Virus record (IMG/VR): IMGVR_UViG_3300010389_000001
Coordinates: 1 to 64,000 of that record
Reading direction: 5' to 3' (one strand)
DNA length: 64,000 bases
Of the stretch, positions 25,357-53,026 are shown piece after piece (position 1 is the stretch's first letter; every line of letters begins with the position of its first letter). A program made the translations under genes and the position numbers. The notes beneath the pieces are model-generated. The model did no database searches. It saw nothing but the letters and a program-made list of their open reading frames with translations, and had not been told where the DNA came from.

Positions 25357-26075
25357 GAGGGTAAAATGCGCGCAACTATTGCAACAAGAAGCGGAAATAA
25401 AGCAACGGGCGATTGCCCTCTTTGTTCAACCGAGGTAAGCGTAAGCCTCGTTGATAGAAATCATAGCTGCAATAATTGCGGGCTTCCATTTGGCGTTAAG
25501 CCTTATTTGAATGGATTCCTTTTTGTTCTAAAGCCTACTTGGGATCCTAATCAGCCGCCCTCTGGAAAGACTATCTCGATTGAAGAGTGGGAGGGTTACT
25601 GATATGTCTCAAAGGCTTCCAAAAAAGATTCTTATCGCAAAGCATGCCCTTGACTCTCAGAACATCAGCGATGAAACAAGAGCCTTTTATAAAGGCCTGA
25701 TTGCTGGATGGGAGTCTGCAAGACCTAAGCCGGAACCCCAAATCTCTCCGGCCCTGAGAAAGACGATGGCCTTTGTTCTTGGGAAAGAAGAGGGCGCTCA
25801 ACTATGCGGAGAAGCTCAAAAAAAGGCTGACCCTAATCCTGATTCGGATAGAATGTATCAGATTTATTCGAAAAATGAATGGGAGGCTTGGGGCTTTAAT
25901 TCTTTTCGGGATTATTGCTGCTGGCTCGGTCGGACAAACGATTAGTCCTCCCGCCCCGCCGGGGCAAATCATTTACTTAGTTCGAAACGCCTTGTTAAAA
26001 AAAGTTGCACCATATCCCAGGCGGGTTATAGGTAAGTGCAGGGAGGAAAGCGGTTAAGCCGGGATGATGGAATAC

Positions 26076-26160
26076 GGGGCTGTGTCGGAATGGTAGACGA
26101 TGAGGATTTAAAATCCTTTGAGCATAGCTCGTGTGGGTTCGAGTCCCACCAGCCCTACCA
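26076..26160 (+). tRNA. tRNA-Leu (UAA)
   Basis: Class II cloverleaf with long variable arm, loop TTTAAAA, encoded CCA. Confidence 0.9.
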
Positions 26161-26189
26161 TTAAAGCTGATGGCAATCCCGAGCTAAAG

Positions 26190-26660
26190 TTAAGAGTAAG
26201 CGCCCTTATTCTTTCCAGCATGGTTAGGAGATTGGGCGTGACAGTTGGGGCAAACAATTCTAAGATTCGTCAAAGAGTTGTTTAAATGATGTCCGTCAAT
26301 GTGATCGAGTTCAAGCGGGATAGGCTTGCCGTTCCACTTATCAAGGTTGCAGACAGAACATTTAGCCTCAAAGTATCCTTCCTTAAGCAAGCGCAGACGC
26401 AAGCGATGGGAGTTAATAGGATGCTTGTTGGATAGGTATTCAGAAAGCTCTCTCTTGGGAGTATACTTGTTGCCTTTGTTCCAGCCCTGTCCTTTGAAGT
26501 GAGAAGTGTCCACATTCCAGTCTTTAACTGCACTGTGAAATGCTCGATAGGCTCCACCGCCTTTAGAGTTTAATCCCAGGCAGATTAGGGTTTGGCGAAT
26601 AGAGTGAGAGTTTGCTACGGCTTTCTTAAACTCTTCTTCGGTAAATTTTCGATTCTTCAT
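26190..26660 (-). CDS. HNH homing endonuclease, antisense within the intron remnant
   Basis: CSVC...LELDHIDG..LNNSLTNLRIVCPNCHAQ; AAGGAG RBS. Confidence 0.9.
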   Translation of the reverse strand: MKNRKFTEEEFKKAVANSHSIRQTLICLGLNSKGGGAYRAFHSAVKDWNVDTSHFKGQGWNKGNKYTPKRELSEYLSNKHPINSHRLRLRLLKEGYFEAKCSVCNLDKWNGKPIPLELDHIDGHHLNNSLTNLRIVCPNCHAQSPNHAGKNKGAYS

Positions 26661-26895
26661 TTGATACTCCTTTTGAAGTTTGGAGACTTAATGGTTGCTG
26701 CCTACGTGCTTGGACGCATAAGGTAAAGAGAAAGTCCAGACCATCAAAGCCTATACCGGATACGAAAGTATTAGTAGGGGTAGCAGCGAAAGCTGTAGTG
26801 GTAAGCAAAATCCCCCGGCTCCCGGTACCACCTTTTAAATTTTATTGCATCATATCCCAGGCGGGTTATAGGTAGGTGCGGGGAGGGTCGAGCGA

Positions 26896-27270
26896 ATGAA
26901 GGTAAGCAATAACATTGTTGAGCTTGCTATCTGTCAGGCCCGCAAGTCTCCAATGCAATATCGGCATGGAGCGGTTCTTTGGAAGGATAATAAGATTCTT
27001 CAGACAGGCTATAACTTTCCGGTTGTAATGCCAAGGGCGAATACAAAGCAATTTTCTATTCATGCAGAGAGAGACTGCCTAAAGGGTTTGCGGGCAGATC
27101 AGATTTACGGATCCTCTTTGCTTTCAGTAAGAATTACTCTTAAAAAGGAATGGCTAACTTCTTCTAGGCCCTGCAAGGGTTGTATGTCTCTTCTGCGAAG
27201 AAAGGGCGTAAATAAAGTTTATTGGTTTGATTCGGAGGGAAACCTCAACAGAGCCTACCTCCAAAAATAA
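26896..27270 (+). CDS. Cytidine/dCMP deaminase-superfamily protein
   Basis: HGAVL, SIHAE, SRPCKGC zinc motif. Confidence 0.85.
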   Translation: MKVSNNIVELAICQARKSPMQYRHGAVLWKDNKILQTGYNFPVVMPRANTKQFSIHAERDCLKGLRADQIYGSSLLSVRITLKKEWLTSSRPCKGCMSLLRRKGVNKVYWFDSEGNLNRAYLQK

Positions 27271-27504
27271 TCAAAAAAATTTGGTGGACTTTTCGGGTCC
27301 GCTGGTTAAGCTGGATGGGCGAGGGGGATTCGATGAAGAAAAGTCTTGAACCGCTTAAGGAAGCATTAGTTGATTTCCTCCATGATCCATTGGGACATTT
27401 TTTAGCGGCATCAGTTTGGATTGTTGTCTTTATTATGGGATGGCTAATCTTTCGAACGATTGCTACTCGCGCACTTCAGATTATTGGAGTAATTTAATTT
27501 TTAT

Positions 27505-27821: not shown

Positions 27822-29270
27822 ATGAATCCGATTGTCCAGTCTATGATGAATGCCTCCACCACTCTCAACGGTGGGGCAACAAACCTTTCTTCCAACAATC
27901 CCGTTGTTGATTTGTTTTTTCAGATCGGCGCTATGCGCGCGTGGTCGGAAGAGGCTATCATCCAGGCGTTTGAGCGTGCCTTCGCGTACAATCAAGCTCA
28001 AGCTCTAAAGGTTCTTTTCTGGGCGCGTGATATTCGCCAGGGCTCCGGTGAGCGCCGCACTTTCCGGGTTGTCTGCCGGCATCTCGCCCAGAATCATACC
28101 GAACTAATGAACGGCCTTATGCGGCTTATTCCCGAGTATGGCCGATGGGATGATTTGCTTTGCTTCATCAATCCAGAGGCCGAGAAGGCTCCATGTGAGG
28201 AGCAGGCTCTCTTTCTCATTGCTGATGCGCTTTACTCCGGTAACGCCCTGGCCGCGAAGTGGTGCCCGCGTGAACGCTCGTCTAAGCGCGCTCTCGCACG
28301 CAAGATTCGTAAGCATATGAGGCTATGTCCAAGGGAATACCGAAAGCTCCTTAGCTCTACGACTAAGGTTGTTGAGTCGCAGATGTGCGCGGGTGAATGG
28401 GATTCCATTAACTATGGGCATGTGCCTTCGCAGGCTATGTCTATTTATAAGAATGCCTTTGGTCGCCACTCCGAAGAGCGCTGGGCCGAATATCTAAAGG
28501 GACTTGCAAGCGGAACCGAAAAGGTTAATGCTGGAGCCATTTACCCGCATGAGATTATCGGAAAGTATATTTCCCAATATGAAAAGCGTCAGATCCCCGC
28601 TGTTTCGGAAGCTCAGTGGGCTGCTATGCCGAACTGGATGGAGAATAATCCTTACCGGATTCTGCCTGTTGTAGATACTTCTGGGTCAATGTATGGCAGC
28701 TACGCCGAATCCTCTTCCCTAAAGCCCATTCAAGTCTCTGTTGCTCTTGGTCTTTACATTGCTGAGCGTAACGAAGGTCCTTTCAAGGATTGCTTTGTTA
28801 CATTCTCTGAGAATCCGGCAATGCAATATGTGTATGGCGATAACCTAACGGACCGTGTAAATTCGGTATCGTCTGCCGATTGGGGCATGAATACAGATCT
28901 TTACCGCACTTTTGATGCTATCTTGAGCCATGCTCAGCGTGTACGCGCAGCGCATTATGACATGCCAAATGTTGTGCTCATTCTTTCGGATATGGAATTC
29001 GATGTGGGCGTGAGTGTAAACAAGACTGCCATGGAGCAAGCTCGGGAGCTATGGGCTCGTTCGGGCTATGAGTTTCCAAAGATTGTTTTCTGGAACCTCA
29101 ATGCGCGAGGAGGCAATGTTCCGGTTCTCTTCCGCGAAGATGGAACCGCTCTCGTCTCTGGCTTCTCCCCGGCAATTATGAAGTCTCTTCTTTCTGGAGA
29201 GAACTTTACTCCCGAAGGGATTATGCTTCAAACAATTGAGGGAGAGCGATACTCTCAAGTTTCTCTATAA
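27822..29270 (+). CDS. TROVE/Ro60-like protein with vWA domain (DUF2828-like)
   Basis: LFWARDIRQGSGER, EYGRWDDL, AAKWCPR, MIDAS-like VVDTSGSM, ILSDMEFD, IVFWNL, LVSGFSP. Confidence 0.85.
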   Translation: MNPIVQSMMNASTTLNGGATNLSSNNPVVDLFFQIGAMRAWSEEAIIQAFERAFAYNQAQALKVLFWARDIRQGSGERRTFRVVCRHLAQNHTELMNGLMRLIPEYGRWDDLLCFINPEAEKAPCEEQALFLIADALYSGNALAAKWCPRERSSKRALARKIRKHMRLCPREYRKLLSSTTKVVESQMCAGEWDSINYGHVPSQAMSIYKNAFGRHSEERWAEYLKGLASGTEKVNAGAIYPHEIIGKYISQYEKRQIPAVSEAQWAAMPNWMENNPYRILPVVDTSGSMYGSYAESSSLKPIQVSVALGLYIAERNEGPFKDCFVTFSENPAMQYVYGDNLTDRVNSVSSADWGMNTDLYRTFDAILSHAQRVRAAHYDMPNVVLILSDMEFDVGVSVNKTAMEQARELWARSGYEFPKIVFWNLNARGGNVPVLFREDGTALVSGFSPAIMKSLLSGENFTPEGIMLQTIEGERYSQVSL

Positions 29271-29881: not shown

Positions 29882-29974
29882 TTCTTTTAAAAAAGTTGCA
29901 CCATATCCCAGTCCGGTTATAGGTAGGTAGGGAGCGGGGCGTCAGATAAAACAATTTTTCATTCCGTATCCTTC

Positions 29975-30047: not shown

Positions 30048-30633
30048 CTCCCCTCACTCAAGCGTACCTATCTCTATTAGCAAACTGGCTGGAGATTAAT
30101 TACCTTCTGCAAGGTTCGAATCCTCGCTGTGAAAAAGATAGGTTGAGGCTATAATATTTAAGACTATAAAATGGAAAAGTAAGGTGAGCCTGGGAAGGCT
30201 CTATCCAGCCTGAAAAATGCCATACAAATGGTCGCCTTTTAGATTATAGAAAAGCGTATGCTCACCACCAACATAGGGTCCGGACTACAGAGAGTGGCTT
30301 TCTCATAAGCCACTCTCTGTAAGACACCCGTGAGCGGGTCGCGCTAATGATGTTGGAAACTAGAGGGAAGTAGGGACTTCGTGCGCCCGAATAACAATAG
30401 ACGTTACTGCCTCGCTTAAATCCAGTACCTCTTATGGTGAAACAATCGGTTCCAGCTATAGCTGGCGTGAAATCTGGAGAGCGGTTATTGATCTTGGGAC
30501 CGCACCCCGCTGGCACACCGGGTAAAGTGTGCCAACCCAAAAATATGATAGTCATTCCTATTTTTTTGCGTATAATGTTTTTGCATTAATCTTGATGCCC
30601 CTTAGCTCAGCTTTGGTTAGAGCAGCGGACTGT

Positions 30634-31477
30634 CGCGAAAATGGCAGCTTTAAGGAGAAACTCTTAAAGAAAACCAATCAAATTCGGGGAACCCTTTAAA
30701 ATGGCAATCCCGAGCCAAGCCTCAAAAGAGGAAGGTGTAGAGACTATTTTCTAAATAATTAAAACCTCATCTAGAATGAAGGAAGGAACAATGACAACTA
30801 AACGAGCAAAAAGTCTTTTGTTAGCTATGTCTATCGGTGATGGGTCTGTCCGTAAAGATAGACCAGAGCTTCAAATTGGGCATAGTATAAAGCAAAAAGA
30901 TTTTTGTGAAGAAAAAGCAAAATTGCTTGGAGAATGTTTGGAGCGAAACATTAATACCCGCATAAAAACATATGGCGGATATGATTGTATTCGGTTTAGC
31001 GTTACTCATCCATATTTGAAATTTGTTAGAAAGTGGTTATATAAAAATAATCAAAAAACTCTTAACATTAAAGTGTTGAGAAGACTAACAGATGAAGCAA
31101 TTGCTATTTGGTATATGGACGATGGAAGTCTTTATACTAAAAAAAGAAATGGAATACCTCACGCATTTGAGCTTGTTATTTCAACTTGCTGTCCTACAGT
31201 AGAAGAAGCGCAAACAATTTGTGACTTCTTTTATGAAAGATATGAAGTTAAAATGACGATCAAGAAAATGAAAGGAAGATTTTCCGTTCGCTGTGGAACG
31301 CAAAATGCTCGTAAGTTGATACCTATTCTAGAACCTTATTGTATGTCTGGAATGGAATATAAGTTCAAACCAATTTTAGAAAACTAGACGGTTGGCACCT
31401 AAACAGATAAAGCTGTAGGTGATGGGATAGTCCAGACCACAAACAATTTAATTGGCAGTGAAAACTGTAGTGGTAAG
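30634..31477 (+). mobile_element. Group I intron
   Basis: P1 CTGTC/GGCAG with a U.G pair at the 5' splice site; core AAATTCGGGGAA, GGCAATCCCGAGCC, GAGACT...ATAGTCC; terminal G. Confidence 0.85.
30776..31387 (+). CDS. Intron-encoded LAGLIDADG homing endonuclease (two motifs)
   Basis: LLAMSIGDGSV and IAIWYMDDGSL. Confidence 0.88.
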   Translation: MKEGTMTTKRAKSLLLAMSIGDGSVRKDRPELQIGHSIKQKDFCEEKAKLLGECLERNINTRIKTYGGYDCIRFSVTHPYLKFVRKWLYKNNQKTLNIKVLRRLTDEAIAIWYMDDGSLYTKKRNGIPHAFELVISTCCPTVEEAQTICDFFYERYEVKMTIKKMKGRFSVRCGTQNARKLIPILEPYCMSGMEYKFKPILEN

Positions 31478-32076
31478 TAATCCGCGTGTCCTCGGTTCGA
31501 GTCCGAGAGGGGCAGCCATCTATTTAGCGGGCTTACTCAGAGAGGAACAAAATGTATGTTGTCGATATTTGGGACTCGAAGAACCGAGCCGAAGCCGGCC
31601 CGCACTGGGTTACCGGAAAAGATCTAAGTTTGAAGGAAGCGCTTAATAAAGCAAAGAAGTGGGTTGAGGAATCTGATACCCCGGCTATTTATGAGGTTAT
31701 GTACCGAATTGTTGGATGCCTCTAGGAGAAGTTTTGAGTGAAGAACCTCCCACTTATTGGGAATCTTTAATTGCCGGACTAACAATGACCAAGGAAGATT
31801 GGAAGGCCATTCGAAGTTTGGTGCTAATTATTTTATTTGTTTTAACAATGATTTTCTTTGTTTAAATGATTGGAGGCTTAAATGGGTCTTGACTTTTTTC
31901 AGACTAGAATGGGGCTCACTCTATTTGAGCGAGACGTTCCAGAATTCCTAAGGTTGCTAGAAAGAATTGCCGACGAGCTTAAGCGCAGCAATGATCTAAA
32001 GGAAGAGGGGATGGAAACTGGAACCAAGCGTTCCTTTCGCGGAACCCTTACTGGCGTTGATTATTAACAAAGCTTT

Positions 32077-32378: not shown

Positions 32379-32912
32379 ATGCTAACCTTAGATTCCTTAA
32401 ATCCAGATAAGCCTCTCTCTGTTTTTCTTGCAATTGGCTTTGCAGAGAAAGCCTTCCCGGTTTGGGAAAAAGAATATCCTGAGGATATGAGGCCGAGAAG
32501 GGCAATCGAAGCAGCTAAGGAGTGGCTAAAGAATCCCTCTGCTGCTGCTGCTAATGATGCTCGTGCTGCTTCTGCTGCTTCTGCTGCTTCTGCTTCTGCT
32601 GCTGATGCTGCTGATGCTGCTAATGCTGCTTATGATGCTGCTGCTTATGCTGCTTATGCTGCTGATGCTGCTGCTTATGCTGCTGCTTCTGCTGCTTCTG
32701 CTGCTAATGCTGCTTATGCTGCTGCTTATGCTGCTGCTTTAGTAGTAGATAAAGAAATCTTAATCCACGAAGTAATCTTAGAAAACCTAGACTGGATTCT
32801 GCAATATAAAATAGAGAATGAACAAAGCTTTGCTCAACCAGAGTTGGTCTTTGATTACTTAACCGAAGAACAAAAGCAGAGTTTTCTGTTTAATTTAGAT
32901 GCGGTGGCCTAA
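32379..32912 (+). CDS. Imm5-like protein with Ala-rich repeat, paralog 1
   Basis: WEKEYPEDMRPRRAIEAAKEW, (GCT)n-rich tract, C-terminal FLFNLD. Confidence 0.7.
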   Translation: MLTLDSLNPDKPLSVFLAIGFAEKAFPVWEKEYPEDMRPRRAIEAAKEWLKNPSAAAANDARAASAASAASASAADAADAANAAYDAAAYAAYAADAAAYAAASAASAANAAYAAAYAAALVVDKEILIHEVILENLDWILQYKIENEQSFAQPELVFDYLTEEQKQSFLFNLDAVA

Positions 32913-44418: not shown

Positions 44419-44901
44419 ATGCTAACCTTAGAGTCACTAAATCCAGATAAGCCTCTCTCTGTTTTTCTTGCGATTGGATTTTCAGAGAAGGCACTCCCGG
44501 TTTGGGAAAAAGAATATCCGAAGGATATGAGGCCGAGAAAAGCAATCGAAGCAGCTAAGGAATGGCTAAGCAATCCCTCTGCTGCTGCTGCTGCTGCTGC
44601 TAGGGCTGCTTATGCTGCTGCTTATGCTGCTGCTTCTGCTGCTGCTAATGATGCTGCTTATGCTGCTTATGCTGCTGCTAGGGCTGCTTCTGCTGCTGCT
44701 TATGCTGCTGTTTATGCTGCTAGGGCTTTAAAGGCAGATAAGGAAAGCTTAATCCACGAAGTAATCTTAGAAAACCTAGATTGGATTCTGCAATATAAGA
44801 TTGAGAATGGACAGAGTTTTGGAGATCCAGAGTTAATTTTTGATTACTTAACCGAAGAACAAAAGCAAAGATTTCTGTTTAATTTAGATGCGGTGGCCTA
44901 A
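44419..44901 (+). CDS. Imm5-like protein with Ala-rich repeat, paralog 2
   Basis: Flanks near-identical to 32379-32912, different repeat tract. Confidence 0.75.
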   Translation: MLTLESLNPDKPLSVFLAIGFSEKALPVWEKEYPKDMRPRKAIEAAKEWLSNPSAAAAAAARAAYAAAYAAASAAANDAAYAAYAAARAASAAAYAAVYAARALKADKESLIHEVILENLDWILQYKIENGQSFGDPELIFDYLTEEQKQRFLFNLDAVA

Positions 44902-46230: not shown

Positions 46231-46307
46231 GCGGAAGTATCCCCTCGGCCTCCTAAGCTGTTGAAAGGGTAACTGGACACATGCGGGTTCGACTCCCGCC
46301 TTCCGCA
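46231..46307 (+). tRNA. Non-canonical tRNA-Arg(CCU)-like RNA lacking a D arm
   Basis: Perfect GCGGAAG/CTTCCGC acceptor, GCGGG-TTCGACT-CCCGC T arm, CGGC-CTCCTAA-GCTG arm; only ~8 nt between acceptor and anticodon arm. Confidence 0.6.
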
Positions 46308-46597
46308 CTCTAAAACAATAGAAGAAAACTAAAAGCATTGGAGCATAAAATGAAGGTGAGTATAGGCGCTAAGCTTTATTTGAGTAAGCTTGGGGCTTAC
46401 GGGTTTCACTATCCTAATAACGAGAAGCCTTTAACGGTAACAGCTACCTTCTCTGCAAAGGAGGTTTCCTGGGTCGGAAGTAAGTTTTACTCTGCCATTA
46501 TACCGGATGATCAGGCGACTGCTGTGGATTCAGATGGTAACTTTTATCGAATCAACTACCCGGTCTGGGTTGAAAATTCGTAAAATCTAAATTGATC

Positions 46598-52649: not shown

Positions 52650-53026
52650 GGGGGTGAATAGGTTTCGACGTGGCAATGAGCCTGGATAGTGCAAGCGGTC
52701 TGCGGCAACAAAAGACCTAAATAGTGTTGCAAAACTAATAATTGCCAACAACAATTATCACTACAACTCTGTCGCTCTAGCGGCTTAGTCGTCGGGGCTT
52801 CTAGTCGCCTTGTAACCAAAGGCTAGATAACAGGTAGATCCCTGCGAAAATAAAAAATCAAAATGGCTACCCTCGTTGTATGAGGTGGAGCGCAATAGGG
52901 CAGTGAGCGCTGGTTGGAAAATCTGTCTATCTTTGCTGATTTGTGATAGTAAATCGGACAAGCTTGTGAACGACTTGAATGGTTATTTGTTGCGGACGCG
53001 AGTTTCGATTCTCGCCACCTCCACCA
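52650..53026 (+). ncRNA. ssrA: tmRNA; tag peptide ANNNYHYNSVALAA (52744-52788)
   Basis: GGGGGTG...GGTTTCGAC 5' end, G3:U70 acceptor, TTCGATT T-loop, CCA, tag ending in ALAA. Confidence 0.93.

What the first reader, a model, noticed from the sequence alone, without database searches (positions are those of the whole stretch)
26058..26830. Nested tRNA locus: intact tRNA-Leu(UAA) inside a decayed intron-split tRNA-Leu(CAA) whose intron holds an antisense HNH
Seen: an orphan 5' tRNA start (26058-26073) and matching 3' acceptor plus CCA (26820-26830). Between them lie a full tRNA-Leu(UAA), intron-core words shared with the Asn intron (ATGGCAATCCCGAGC, GAGACT, AGTCCAGACCA, CTGTAGTGGTAAG) and an intact HNH on the opposite strand. 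The intron end is followed by CAAAATCC, implying a CAA anticodon. The intron 5' part and T arm are lost. Inference: replacement of an intron-parasitised tRNA, leaving the endonuclease free-standing.
Basis: partly seen in the sequence, partly recalled or inferred. Interest (0 to 1): 0.65.

Follow-up and report, generated by a model that had tools for sequence, protein, structure and literature searches.

The report
Overwritten intron-split phage tRNA-Leu gene
In this large phage, a leucine tRNA gene once split by a self-splicing intron was partly overwritten by an intact leucine tRNA from a related phage, which killed the old gene and its ribozyme but left the intron's DNA-cutting enzyme gene whole.

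Summary
Window 26058-26830 is the wreck of a tRNA-Leu(CAA) gene that was split between U33 and C34 by a group I intron. That intron carries a 156-aa HNH endonuclease gene on the opposite strand, inside stem P6.

Two metagenomic relatives, L082 (95% identical over 26162-26819) and L083 (88%), carry the same intron and HNH inside complete exons. Joined in silico, those exons give tRNA-Leu(CAA).

The window copy differs in three ways:
- **Patch:** 26066-26162 is a 97-nt piece (10-nt leader plus intronless tRNA-Leu(UAA)), 96/97 identical to one in a related phage (L087). It replaced everything from the D loop of exon 1 to the 5' strand of P5.
- **Deletion:** 28 nt are missing at 26819/26820, which removes the variable and T arms.
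- **Core changes:** the conserved J6/7 word GTGTAGAG reads GTTTGGAG.

The HNH frame is full length, with 9 synonymous and 3 replacement changes on this lineage. It is now free-standing in effect.

Relatives of this HNH sit beside or inside tRNA-Leu genes in many phage contigs, some with similar orphan tRNA pieces. No read or contig spans the junctions, so the assembly is not independently confirmed. I rate it a new variant of a known kind, of moderate interest.

The parts
26005..26046 (+). Promoter-like repeat (TTGCAC...TATAGGTAAGTGC) upstream of the locus, the likely driver of tRNA transcription
   Evidence: A 24-nt core occurs exactly at 26011 and 26851, and with 2 mismatches at 29902 before tRNA-Lys. 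Zero matches are expected by chance. Function is inferred.
26058..26075 (+). Orphan 5' end of the outer tRNA-Leu: acceptor 5' strand 26058-26064, then U8 G9 and the start of the D arm
   Evidence: The first 17 nt are identical to the start of the L049 tRNA-Leu(UAA). It pairs with 26820-26826. 13 of 17 nt match exon 1 of L083.
26066..26162 (+). Imported patch: a 10-nt leader, an intronless tRNA-Leu(UAA) and 2 further nt
   Evidence: 96/97 identical to L087 4306-4402. Logan contigs of two salt-marsh runs match exactly 26066-26162 and have other flanks.
26076..26160 (+). Intact tRNA-Leu(UAA) with encoded CCA, the only tRNA-Leu found in the 232-kb record
   Evidence: ARAGORN and RF00005 at 55.1 bits; whole-record ARAGORN scan.
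26163..26199 (+). Surviving 3' strands of intron stems P5 (26166-26173) and P4 (26176-26183), and the 5' strand of P6 (26184-26199)
   Evidence: Alignment to L082 and L083. Stem assignment was transferred from the RF00028 alignment of the ORF-less family member L079.
26190..26660 (-). HNH endonuclease gene, 156 aa, antisense to the intron and lying in the P6 loop. The RBS AAGGAG is the complement of the P6 3' strand.
   Evidence: PHROG 10822 at E 5e-45. In one 90% cluster with the L082 and L083 proteins. Lineage-specific changes are 9 synonymous and 3 replacement. The Cys pairs and the DH...N...H motif are present in the translation.
26664..26805 (+). Intron 3' domain: P6 3' strand, J6/7 (26678-26685, mutated), P7 5' strand, P3 3' strand (26690-26698), P8, J8/7 and P7 3' strand (26728-26738), P9, and the terminal G at 26805
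   Evidence: 95% identical to L082 with no indels. Changes unique to the window lie at 26680, 26682, 26695, 26700 and 26744.
26806..26819 (+). Start of exon 2: C34 A35 A36 (anticodon CAA), A37 A38, the 3' strand of the anticodon stem (TCCCC), and the first 4 nt of the variable arm
   Evidence: Identical to exon 2 of L082 over these 14 nt.
26820..26830 (+). Acceptor 3' strand, discriminator A and CCA of the outer tRNA. The junction 26819/26820 marks a deletion of about 28 nt covering the variable arm and T arm.
   Evidence: L082 and L083 carry the variable arm and T arm between these points.

Best explanation
The locus is a scar from conflict between mobile elements at a phage tRNA-Leu gene.

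**Ancestral state.** This state is shown in relatives; that it once existed at this site is inferred. It was a tRNA-Leu(CAA) gene split between U33 and C34 by a group I intron of the tRNA-intron type. The intron's P6 loop holds an HNH homing-endonuclease gene on the opposite strand.

**What happened in this phage.**
- A 97-nt piece from a related phage replaced the stretch from the D loop of exon 1 to the 5' strand of P5. The piece is a leader plus an intronless tRNA-Leu(UAA).
- The left crossover lies in a short homology, (GA)TGGAAT(A). The right join has only 1-3 nt of homology.
- That replacement removed the 5' splice site and the 5' strands of P1-P5.
- A further 28-nt deletion removed the T arm, and the conserved J6/7 region picked up two changes.
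- So neither the ribozyme nor the outer tRNA can work.

**How it works now (inferred).**
- The upstream promoter-like repeat drives a transcript from which tRNA-Leu(UAA) is processed. That tRNA can read UUA and UUG, so it covers the lost CAA isoacceptor.
- The HNH gene is expressed from the other strand through its own strong RBS and acts as a free-standing homing endonuclease.
- It would cut intron-less tRNA-Leu(CAA) genes of co-infecting relatives near the anticodon stem-loop, so that repair copies this locus.
- The resident tRNA-Leu(UAA) differs at 5 of the 17 stem-loop positions and is probably not cut.
For: - **Intact relatives.** L082 (95%) and L083 (88%) hold the same intron and HNH between complete exons that join to tRNA-Leu(CAA).
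- **Sharp boundaries.** Similarity to L082 runs exactly from 26162 to 26819. Beyond those points the relative's contig continues with the missing intron 5' strands and T arm.
- **Real splice-site shift.** In the CAA type the internal guide GGTC pairs with exon GACU(33). In the UAA type GAGY pairs with ACUU(34).
- **Group I family.** ORF-less members reach or come close to the Rfam RF00028 cutoff of 50 bits: L076 63 bits, L079 60.5 bits, L071 49.6 bits.
- **Patch source.** The patch is 96/97 identical to L087, whose flanking genes match window 44-51 kb at 73-82% nucleotide identity.
- **HNH conserved.** It is full length, with 9 synonymous and 3 replacement changes on this lineage.
- **Ribozyme decay.** J6/7 is GTGTAGAG in every intact relative and in the window's own Asn intron, but GTTTGGAG here.
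- **tRNA-Leu association.** This HNH family lies next to or inside tRNA-Leu genes in about half of the first 30 related loci. Orphan Leu fragments occur in L087, L086 and L014.
- **No other Leu tRNA.** None is found in the 232-kb record.
Against: - No read or contig independently spans the three junctions.
- An intact intron at this exact site in an ancestor of this phage is inferred, not seen. No syntenic relative was found through the flanking proteins.
- HNH activity, target and expression are untested, and no promoter for it was recognised.
- The ratio of 9 synonymous to 3 replacement changes has little statistical power.
- The record is only 68% complete by CheckV, so a tRNA-Leu(CAA) could lie in the missing part.
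Confidence: 0.68

Rival explanations
1. One-step mosaic repair. A resident intron-less tRNA-Leu gene (acceptor GCCGGGA/TCCCGGT) was cut by a homing endonuclease during mixed infection. It was then repaired by template switching that stitched in a 97-nt piece from an L087-like phage and a 658-nt piece from an L082-like intron. On this view no working intron ever existed at this site.
For: Both inner segments have sharp borders with only microhomology at the joins: 26065/66, 26161/62 and 26819/20. The flanks of L082 and L083 are unrelated to the window. Orphan tRNA-Leu pieces around HNH cassettes recur in L087 and L014.
Against: It needs three illegitimate joins in one event. The intron part differs from L082 by 5%, and its window-unique changes include two in the conserved J6/7. 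That fits time spent as a relic just as well. The data cannot separate this rival from the main model.
Confidence: 0.2
2. Metagenome assembly chimera. Reads of an L087-like phage and of a phage with the intact intron gene were joined wrongly.
For: L087-like contigs with the same 97 nt are present in the same kind of sample (salt marsh runs X3 and X4). No contig spans the junctions.
Against: - Shared sequence at the joins is 10 nt or less, too short for k-mer assemblers to cross.
- The 97-nt piece is flanked on both sides by sequence of one 232-kb contig.
- The separate 28-nt deletion and the point changes cannot come from chimerism.
- Contig 20 of run X4 (26814-26920, no differences) starts 6 nt left of the deletion junction and reads the deleted form. 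This is weak support.
Confidence: 0.05
3. Tandem genes followed by deletion. An intronless tRNA-Leu(UAA) lay just upstream of the intron-split tRNA-Leu(CAA), and a deletion fused the end of the first to P5 of the second.
For: Tandem Leu(UAA) and Leu(CAA) genes flanking an HNH gene exist in L004.
Against: It does not explain an orphan tRNA 5' end upstream of the UAA gene that pairs with the acceptor strand downstream of the intron. It also does not explain why the 10-nt leader is identical to that of L087, where the gene sits at another genomic site.
Confidence: 0.05
4. The arrangement is functional as it stands, for example as a trans-spliced or permuted tRNA, or as a ribozyme that uses the inner tRNA as a structural part.
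For: The CCA end of the inner tRNA can form a 4-bp P5-like stem with 26170-26173. GCCGGGAT could pair with the P4 3' strand.
Against: - There are no P1, P2 or P3 5' strands.
- The only P4 5' strand word in the whole record belongs to the Asn intron.
- J6/7 is mutated.
- The outer tRNA lacks its T arm and the 5' half of its anticodon stem.
- Rfam gives no hit.
Confidence: 0.02

Closest known systems
[quoted passage not shown]
   Same: A group I intron in the anticodon loop of a tRNA-Leu gene. The more distant phage relatives found here (L002, L003, L005, L006, L066, L071, L079) use the classical U34|A35 site.
   Different: The window's lineage sits in tRNA-Leu(CAA), one base upstream (U33|C34), with a matching change of the internal guide. 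It lies in phage genomes, carries an HNH gene, and is broken in the window.
Phage T4 mobE and the defunct I-TevIII intron endonuclease (PMC2790892)
   Same: A free-standing HNH endonuclease and a group I intron that depend on each other for spread. One partner is defunct while the other stays active.
   Different: In T4 the intron's own endonuclease is dead and the ribozyme works. Here the ribozyme and the host gene are dead and the endonuclease gene is intact.
Phage T4 SegB, a homing endonuclease in the tRNA gene cluster (PMC2330249)
   Same: A free-standing homing endonuclease gene among phage tRNA genes that promotes inheritance of the neighbouring tRNA region in mixed infection.
   Different: SegB is a GIY-YIG enzyme with no intron link. 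Here the enzyme is an HNH that came from inside an intron and is tied to tRNA-Leu.
Antisense homing endonuclease genes in nuclear rDNA group I introns (PMC9548176)
   Same: The endonuclease gene is encoded on the strand opposite to the ribozyme.
   Different: Those are His-Cys box genes in eukaryotic rDNA. Here it is an HNH gene in phage tRNA introns, with the P6 3' strand doubling as the complement of the gene's ribosome binding site.
Azoarcus tRNA-Ile intron, subgroup IC3 (sequence recalled from memory, not tested here)
   Same: The core words CAAAUUCGG, AUGGCAA-CCGAGC and GUGUAGAGACU resemble what I recall of that intron.
   Different: A different host tRNA and insertion site, no ORF, and a bacterial rather than phage setting.

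Membership tests
Group I intron (Rfam RF00028) | Match to the covariance model | tested here: not met
   There is no hit in 25900-27000 at E<=10. L082 and L083 give no hit either, because of the 470-nt ORF in P6. ORF-less family members do hit: L076 63 bits, L079 60.5 bits, L071 49.6 bits, against a cutoff of 50.
Group I intron (Rfam RF00028) | Complete catalytic core: both strands of P3, P4, P5, P6, P7 and P8, and a conserved J6/7 | tested here: not met
   Only the 3' strands of P5, P4 and P3 are present, together with P6, P7, P8 and P9. The 5' strands of P3, P4 and P5 are replaced by the tRNA patch, and J6/7 has 2 changes.
Group I intron (Rfam RF00028) | Splice sites: U before the 5' site paired to a G of the guide in P1, and a terminal G before the 3' site | tested here: inconclusive
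   The terminal G at 26805 is kept, but the 5' splice site and P1 are absent in the window. Both are present in L082 and L083 (exon GACU with guide GGUC).
Group I intron (Rfam RF00028) | Descent from a group I intron (homology) | tested here: met
   95% identity over 658 nt to the intron of L082, and 88% to that of L083.
tRNA (RF00005): inner gene 26076-26160 | Cloverleaf with anticodon UAA and a long variable arm | tested here: met
   55.1 bits against a cutoff of 29; ARAGORN calls Leu(taa).
tRNA (RF00005): outer gene 26058-26830 | A complete set of arms after removal of the insert | tested here: not met
   The D arm is cut after about 17 nt, the 5' strand of the anticodon stem is absent, and the variable arm and T arm are deleted.
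HNH endonuclease | Match to a family profile and presence of the HNH motif | tested here: met
   PHROG 10822 at E 5e-45. Pfam HNH_3 gives E 0.0015, below its cutoff. ELDHI...NN...CPNCH and two Cys pairs are visible in the translation. No relative with a solved structure was found by sequence.
Homing endonuclease | Cuts the allele that lacks it and is copied into the break | not testable with these tools
   The evidence is indirect only. The same intron and HNH sit at 95% identity in phage backbones with unrelated flanks, and family members lie at tRNA-Leu genes in many contigs.

The most novel reading that the evidence does not exclude
HNH genes of this family, together with a linked resistant tRNA-Leu gene, form homing cassettes. 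Such a cassette overwrites a resident tRNA-Leu gene and delivers its replacement in the same event, so the disruption costs the phage nothing. On this reading the window records a collision in which one cassette (L087 type: tRNA-Leu(UAA) plus HNH) partly overwrote another mobile element (the CAA intron with its antisense HNH). This would be a way for tRNA repertoires of large phages to be reshuffled by endonuclease warfare.
Probability: 0.3. Interest if true: 0.75.

Novelty: new variant of a known kind. Interest (0 to 1): 0.58.

Why it matters
A 2014 review stated that every group I intron then known in phages lay in a protein-coding gene, despite the many phage tRNA genes (PMC3984707). My searches of the held library found no later report of one in a phage tRNA gene. 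The library is limited, so a later report may exist.

Here a whole family of phage tRNA-Leu introns appears, with several notable features:
- The endonuclease gene lies on the antisense strand.
- The insertion site moved by one base when the anticodon changed from UAA to CAA, which kept the U needed at the splice site.
- In the window, the usual order of decay is reversed. The ribozyme and host gene are dead, but the endonuclease survives because a foreign tRNA patch took over the tRNA's job.

Together these give a dated, sequence-level snapshot of how an intron-borne endonuclease can become free-standing. They also show how tRNA sets of large phages change through recombination at endonuclease targets.

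Tried and rejected
- **Rfam on the locus** at E<=10 found only the inner tRNA.
- **Synteny search** through the two flanking proteins in IMG/VR found nothing.
- **Pattern scans for more CAA-type introns** gave nothing useful. TAGTGGTAAGCAAAATC in IMG/VR gave 2 chance hits in coding DNA. GGGGACTCAAAYATGGGTC in IMG/VR gave none. GTGGTAAGCAAAATCCCC in GTDB genomes gave 9 chance hits with no intron core words.
- **BLAST against named phages** found only tRNA-Leu genes at 76-85% identity.
- **PDB sequence search** with the HNH protein found nothing.
- **Sigma-70 promoter scan** gave no credible promoter for the HNH gene.
- **A family-specific covariance model** was not built.
- **P4-like pairing of 26058-26065 with 26176-26184** was considered and rejected. 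The same 17 nt are the exact start of a real tRNA-Leu.
- **Reads:** only Logan contigs were on hand, and none bridges a junction.

Full report
**Setting.** The window is the first 64 kb of a 232,533-bp IMG/VR virus record that CheckV rates 68% complete. It carries seven tRNA genes that ARAGORN calls, a tmRNA and an intron-split tRNA-Asn.

**Check of the observation.**
- ARAGORN and Rfam agree on tRNA-Leu(UAA) at 26076-26160 (55.1 bits).
- Directly upstream, 26058-26075 reads like the first 18 nt of a tRNA-Leu: a 7-nt acceptor strand, then TG, then the start of the D arm.
- Its first 17 nt are identical to the start of a genuine intronless phage tRNA-Leu(UAA) in L049. The other six database matches to that 17-mer were random coding DNA.
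- 26820-26830 is the matching acceptor 3' strand, then A and CCA.
- Between the two pieces lie intron words shared with the window's Asn intron.
- Also between them is an open 156-aa frame on the minus strand. It matches PHROG 10822 'HNH endonuclease' at E 5e-45. Its Pfam HNH_3 match is below the cutoff.
- Rfam's group I model does not hit the locus even at E<=10.

**Relatives of the HNH.**
- A scan of IMG/VR with the HNH protein gave 43 loci, and most of the first 30, which I scanned for tRNAs, lie in phage tRNA arrays.
- In L004, L008, L012-L018, L022 and L025 the gene ends a few bases upstream of a tRNA-Leu on the same strand.
- The closest IMG/VR relatives (L002, L003 and L006, 50-55% identity) have the gene antisense inside an intact intron. 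That intron splits tRNA-Leu(UAA) at the classical U34|A35 site.
- L005 has a sense-strand homologue in the P1/P2 region of such an intron.
- A word search for the P5/P4 strand found 28 more loci. They include ORF-less tRNA-Leu(UAA) introns, three of which reach or nearly reach the RF00028 cutoff of 50 bits: L076 63, L079 60.5 and L071 49.6.
- So the family is a group I intron family of phage tRNA-Leu genes. All in-silico joined exons are called tRNA-Leu by ARAGORN.

**The intact counterpart of the window's locus.**
- Laying Logan contigs on 25700-27300 showed a 4737-nt contig of a compost run that matches 26162-26819 with 31 substitutions and no indels. It then runs on unlike the window on both sides.
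- Upstream, that contig has the P3, P4 and P5 5' strands. Downstream, it has a variable arm and a T arm.
- The window's HNH protein shares a 90% cluster with two others. Their contigs were fetched as L082 (that compost contig), L083 and L084.
- L082 and L083 have complete genes. Exon 1 ends ...AGGGGACT, the intron is 711-712 nt and ends ...GTGGTAAG, and exon 2 begins CAAAATCCCC and continues through variable arm, T arm and acceptor.
- Joined, the exons are tRNA-Leu(CAA).
- The intron sits between U33 and C34, one base upstream of the UAA-type site. The internal guide differs to match: GGTC pairs with GACU in the CAA type, and GAGY pairs with ACUU in the UAA type. The shift is therefore functional, not an alignment artefact.
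- In both types P6 closes around the antisense ORF. The P6 3' strand is the complement of the gene's AAGGAG ribosome binding site.

**What is broken in the window.**
1. Everything from the D loop of exon 1 to the 5' strand of P5 is gone. In its place is 26066-26162.
2. About 28 nt are missing at 26819/26820, namely the rest of the variable arm and the T arm.
3. The window has unique substitutions at 26193 (P6), 26680 and 26682 (J6/7), 26695 (P3 3' strand), 26700 (P8) and 26744. At all of these L082 and L083 agree with each other.
   - J6/7 reads GTGTAGAG in all intact relatives and in the Asn intron, but GTTTGGAG here.
   - By eye, several of the other changes turn a Watson-Crick pair into a G.U pair. 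That is an inference.

**Origin of the patch.**
- A metagenome scan with the inner tRNA's first 24 nt found five contigs.
- L087 matches window 26066-26162 at 96 of 97 positions, including the 10-nt leader and 2 nt after CCA. Two salt-marsh runs hold contigs that match the window over exactly that interval with different flanks.
- L087 is a relative of this phage. Its flanking genes match window 44-51 kb at 73-82% nucleotide identity. The window has no tRNA-Leu at that syntenic spot, where the gap at 46584-46591 is only 8 nt.
- L087 is itself nested. An orphan tRNA-Leu 5' piece, the tRNA-Leu(UAA), a same-strand HNH gene and an orphan T arm plus acceptor piece follow one another, and the two orphan halves pair. 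Its HNH is 48% identical to the window's over the catalytic domain, with the small helical domain moved to the other end.
- L086 has the orphan 5' piece and the same tRNA-Leu(UAA)-plus-HNH arrangement, up to where the contig ends. L014 has an orphan Leu 5' piece upstream of its HNH gene.
- Partial tRNA-Leu duplicates are thus a recurring mark of this endonuclease family.

**State of the endonuclease gene.** All three cluster members are 156 aa. With L083 as the outgroup, the window lineage has 12 unique changes, 9 synonymous and 3 replacement (K5, S43, H124). L082 has 4 unique changes. The Cys pairs and the HNH motif are present. This fits continued constraint, but the counts are small.

**Mechanism.** I conclude that an intron-split tRNA-Leu(CAA) was overwritten by an imported intronless tRNA-Leu(UAA), probably during repair of a break in mixed infection.
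- The left crossover lies in the short homology (GA)TGGAAT(A), shared by the D arm of the resident gene and the donor's leader. The right join is illegitimate.
- The tRNA-Leu(UAA) now supplies leucine decoding. It is the only tRNA-Leu in the record.
- The HNH gene remains as a free-standing homing endonuclease in effect.
- Its likely target is the anticodon stem-loop DNA of intron-less tRNA-Leu(CAA) genes. The resident UAA gene differs at 5 of those 17 positions.
- These functional statements are inferences. Nothing here tests cleavage, expression or splicing.

**Rivals.**
- A one-step mosaic repair, with no intact intron ever at this site, cannot be told apart from decay in place with the present data.
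- An assembly chimera is unlikely. The joins share at most 10 nt, and the deletion and point changes are independent of any join. It is not formally excluded, since no contig bridges a junction.
- A tandem-gene deletion does not explain the orphan 5' end.
- A working ribozyme or split tRNA is excluded by the missing strands. The only other P4 5' strand word in the record belongs to the Asn intron.

**Comparison with what is known.**
- The tRNA-Leu(UAA) intron of cyanobacteria and plastids is the nearest classical system.
- The T4 pair mobE and I-TevIII (PMC2790892) and T4 SegB in the tRNA cluster (PMC2330249) are the nearest phage precedents for endonuclease-driven inheritance.
- Antisense endonuclease genes are known in nuclear rDNA introns (PMC9548176).
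- A 2014 review said that all phage group I introns then known lay in protein-coding genes (PMC3984707). My library searches found no later report of phage tRNA introns. The library is limited, so I rate the finding as a new variant of a known kind rather than something new in category.

Noticed in passing
window 30596-31521: tRNA-Asn(GUU) is split between U35 and U36 by an 844-nt group I intron (RF00028 40.6 bits, below the cutoff of 50). The intron carries a sense-strand LAGLIDADG gene at 30791-31387 (Pfam LAGLIDADG_2, E 1.4e-23). The ORF appears to sit between the P7 5' strand and the P3 3' strand, with the word ACTA repeated at both ends of the insert. That is an unusual place for an ORF.
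   Followed up: partly
window 46231-46307: A weak tRNA hit (RF00005 30.3 bits, cutoff 29) that ARAGORN does not call. It lies where the relative L087 has a normal tRNA-Arg(CCU). The window copy keeps the acceptor, T arm and a CCT loop, but the D-arm region looks abnormal and there is a long extra arm. It may be a decayed or atypical tRNA.
   Followed up: no
L087 3570-4452 (minus strand): A second nested locus. An orphan tRNA-Leu 5' piece, an intact tRNA-Leu(UAA), a 228-aa HNH gene on the same strand, and an orphan T arm plus acceptor piece follow one another. The two orphan halves pair with each other. The cassette appears to have replaced the anticodon and variable arms of a resident tRNA-Leu.
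   Followed up: partly
L005 2840-3700: A tRNA-Leu(UAA) intron in which a 44%-identical HNH gene lies on the sense strand in the P1/P2 region instead of antisense in P6. The same endonuclease family has therefore entered the same intron type in two places and both orientations.
   Followed up: partly
window 26011-26034, 26851-26874, 29902-29925: A repeated 24-nt promoter-like motif (CATATCCCAGGCGGGTTATAGGTA) precedes the Leu locus, a deaminase-like ORF and tRNA-Lys. It does not fit the sigma-70 consensus scan, which suggests a phage-specific promoter.
   Followed up: partly
window 52650-53026: A phage-encoded tmRNA (RF00023, 110 bits) with tag peptide ANNNYHYNSVALAA.
   Followed up: no
window 27822-29270: A 482-aa protein with DUF2828 and DUF7788 domains lies next to the tRNA genes. 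From memory it resembles the TROVE/Ro-like plus vWA class of RNA-binding proteins. This was not tested.
   Followed up: no
window 44419-44901 and about 32380-32902: Two paralogous genes in the window both match one L087 gene (L087 3102-3555) at 72-76% nucleotide identity, which points to a small repeated gene family in this phage group.
   Followed up: no
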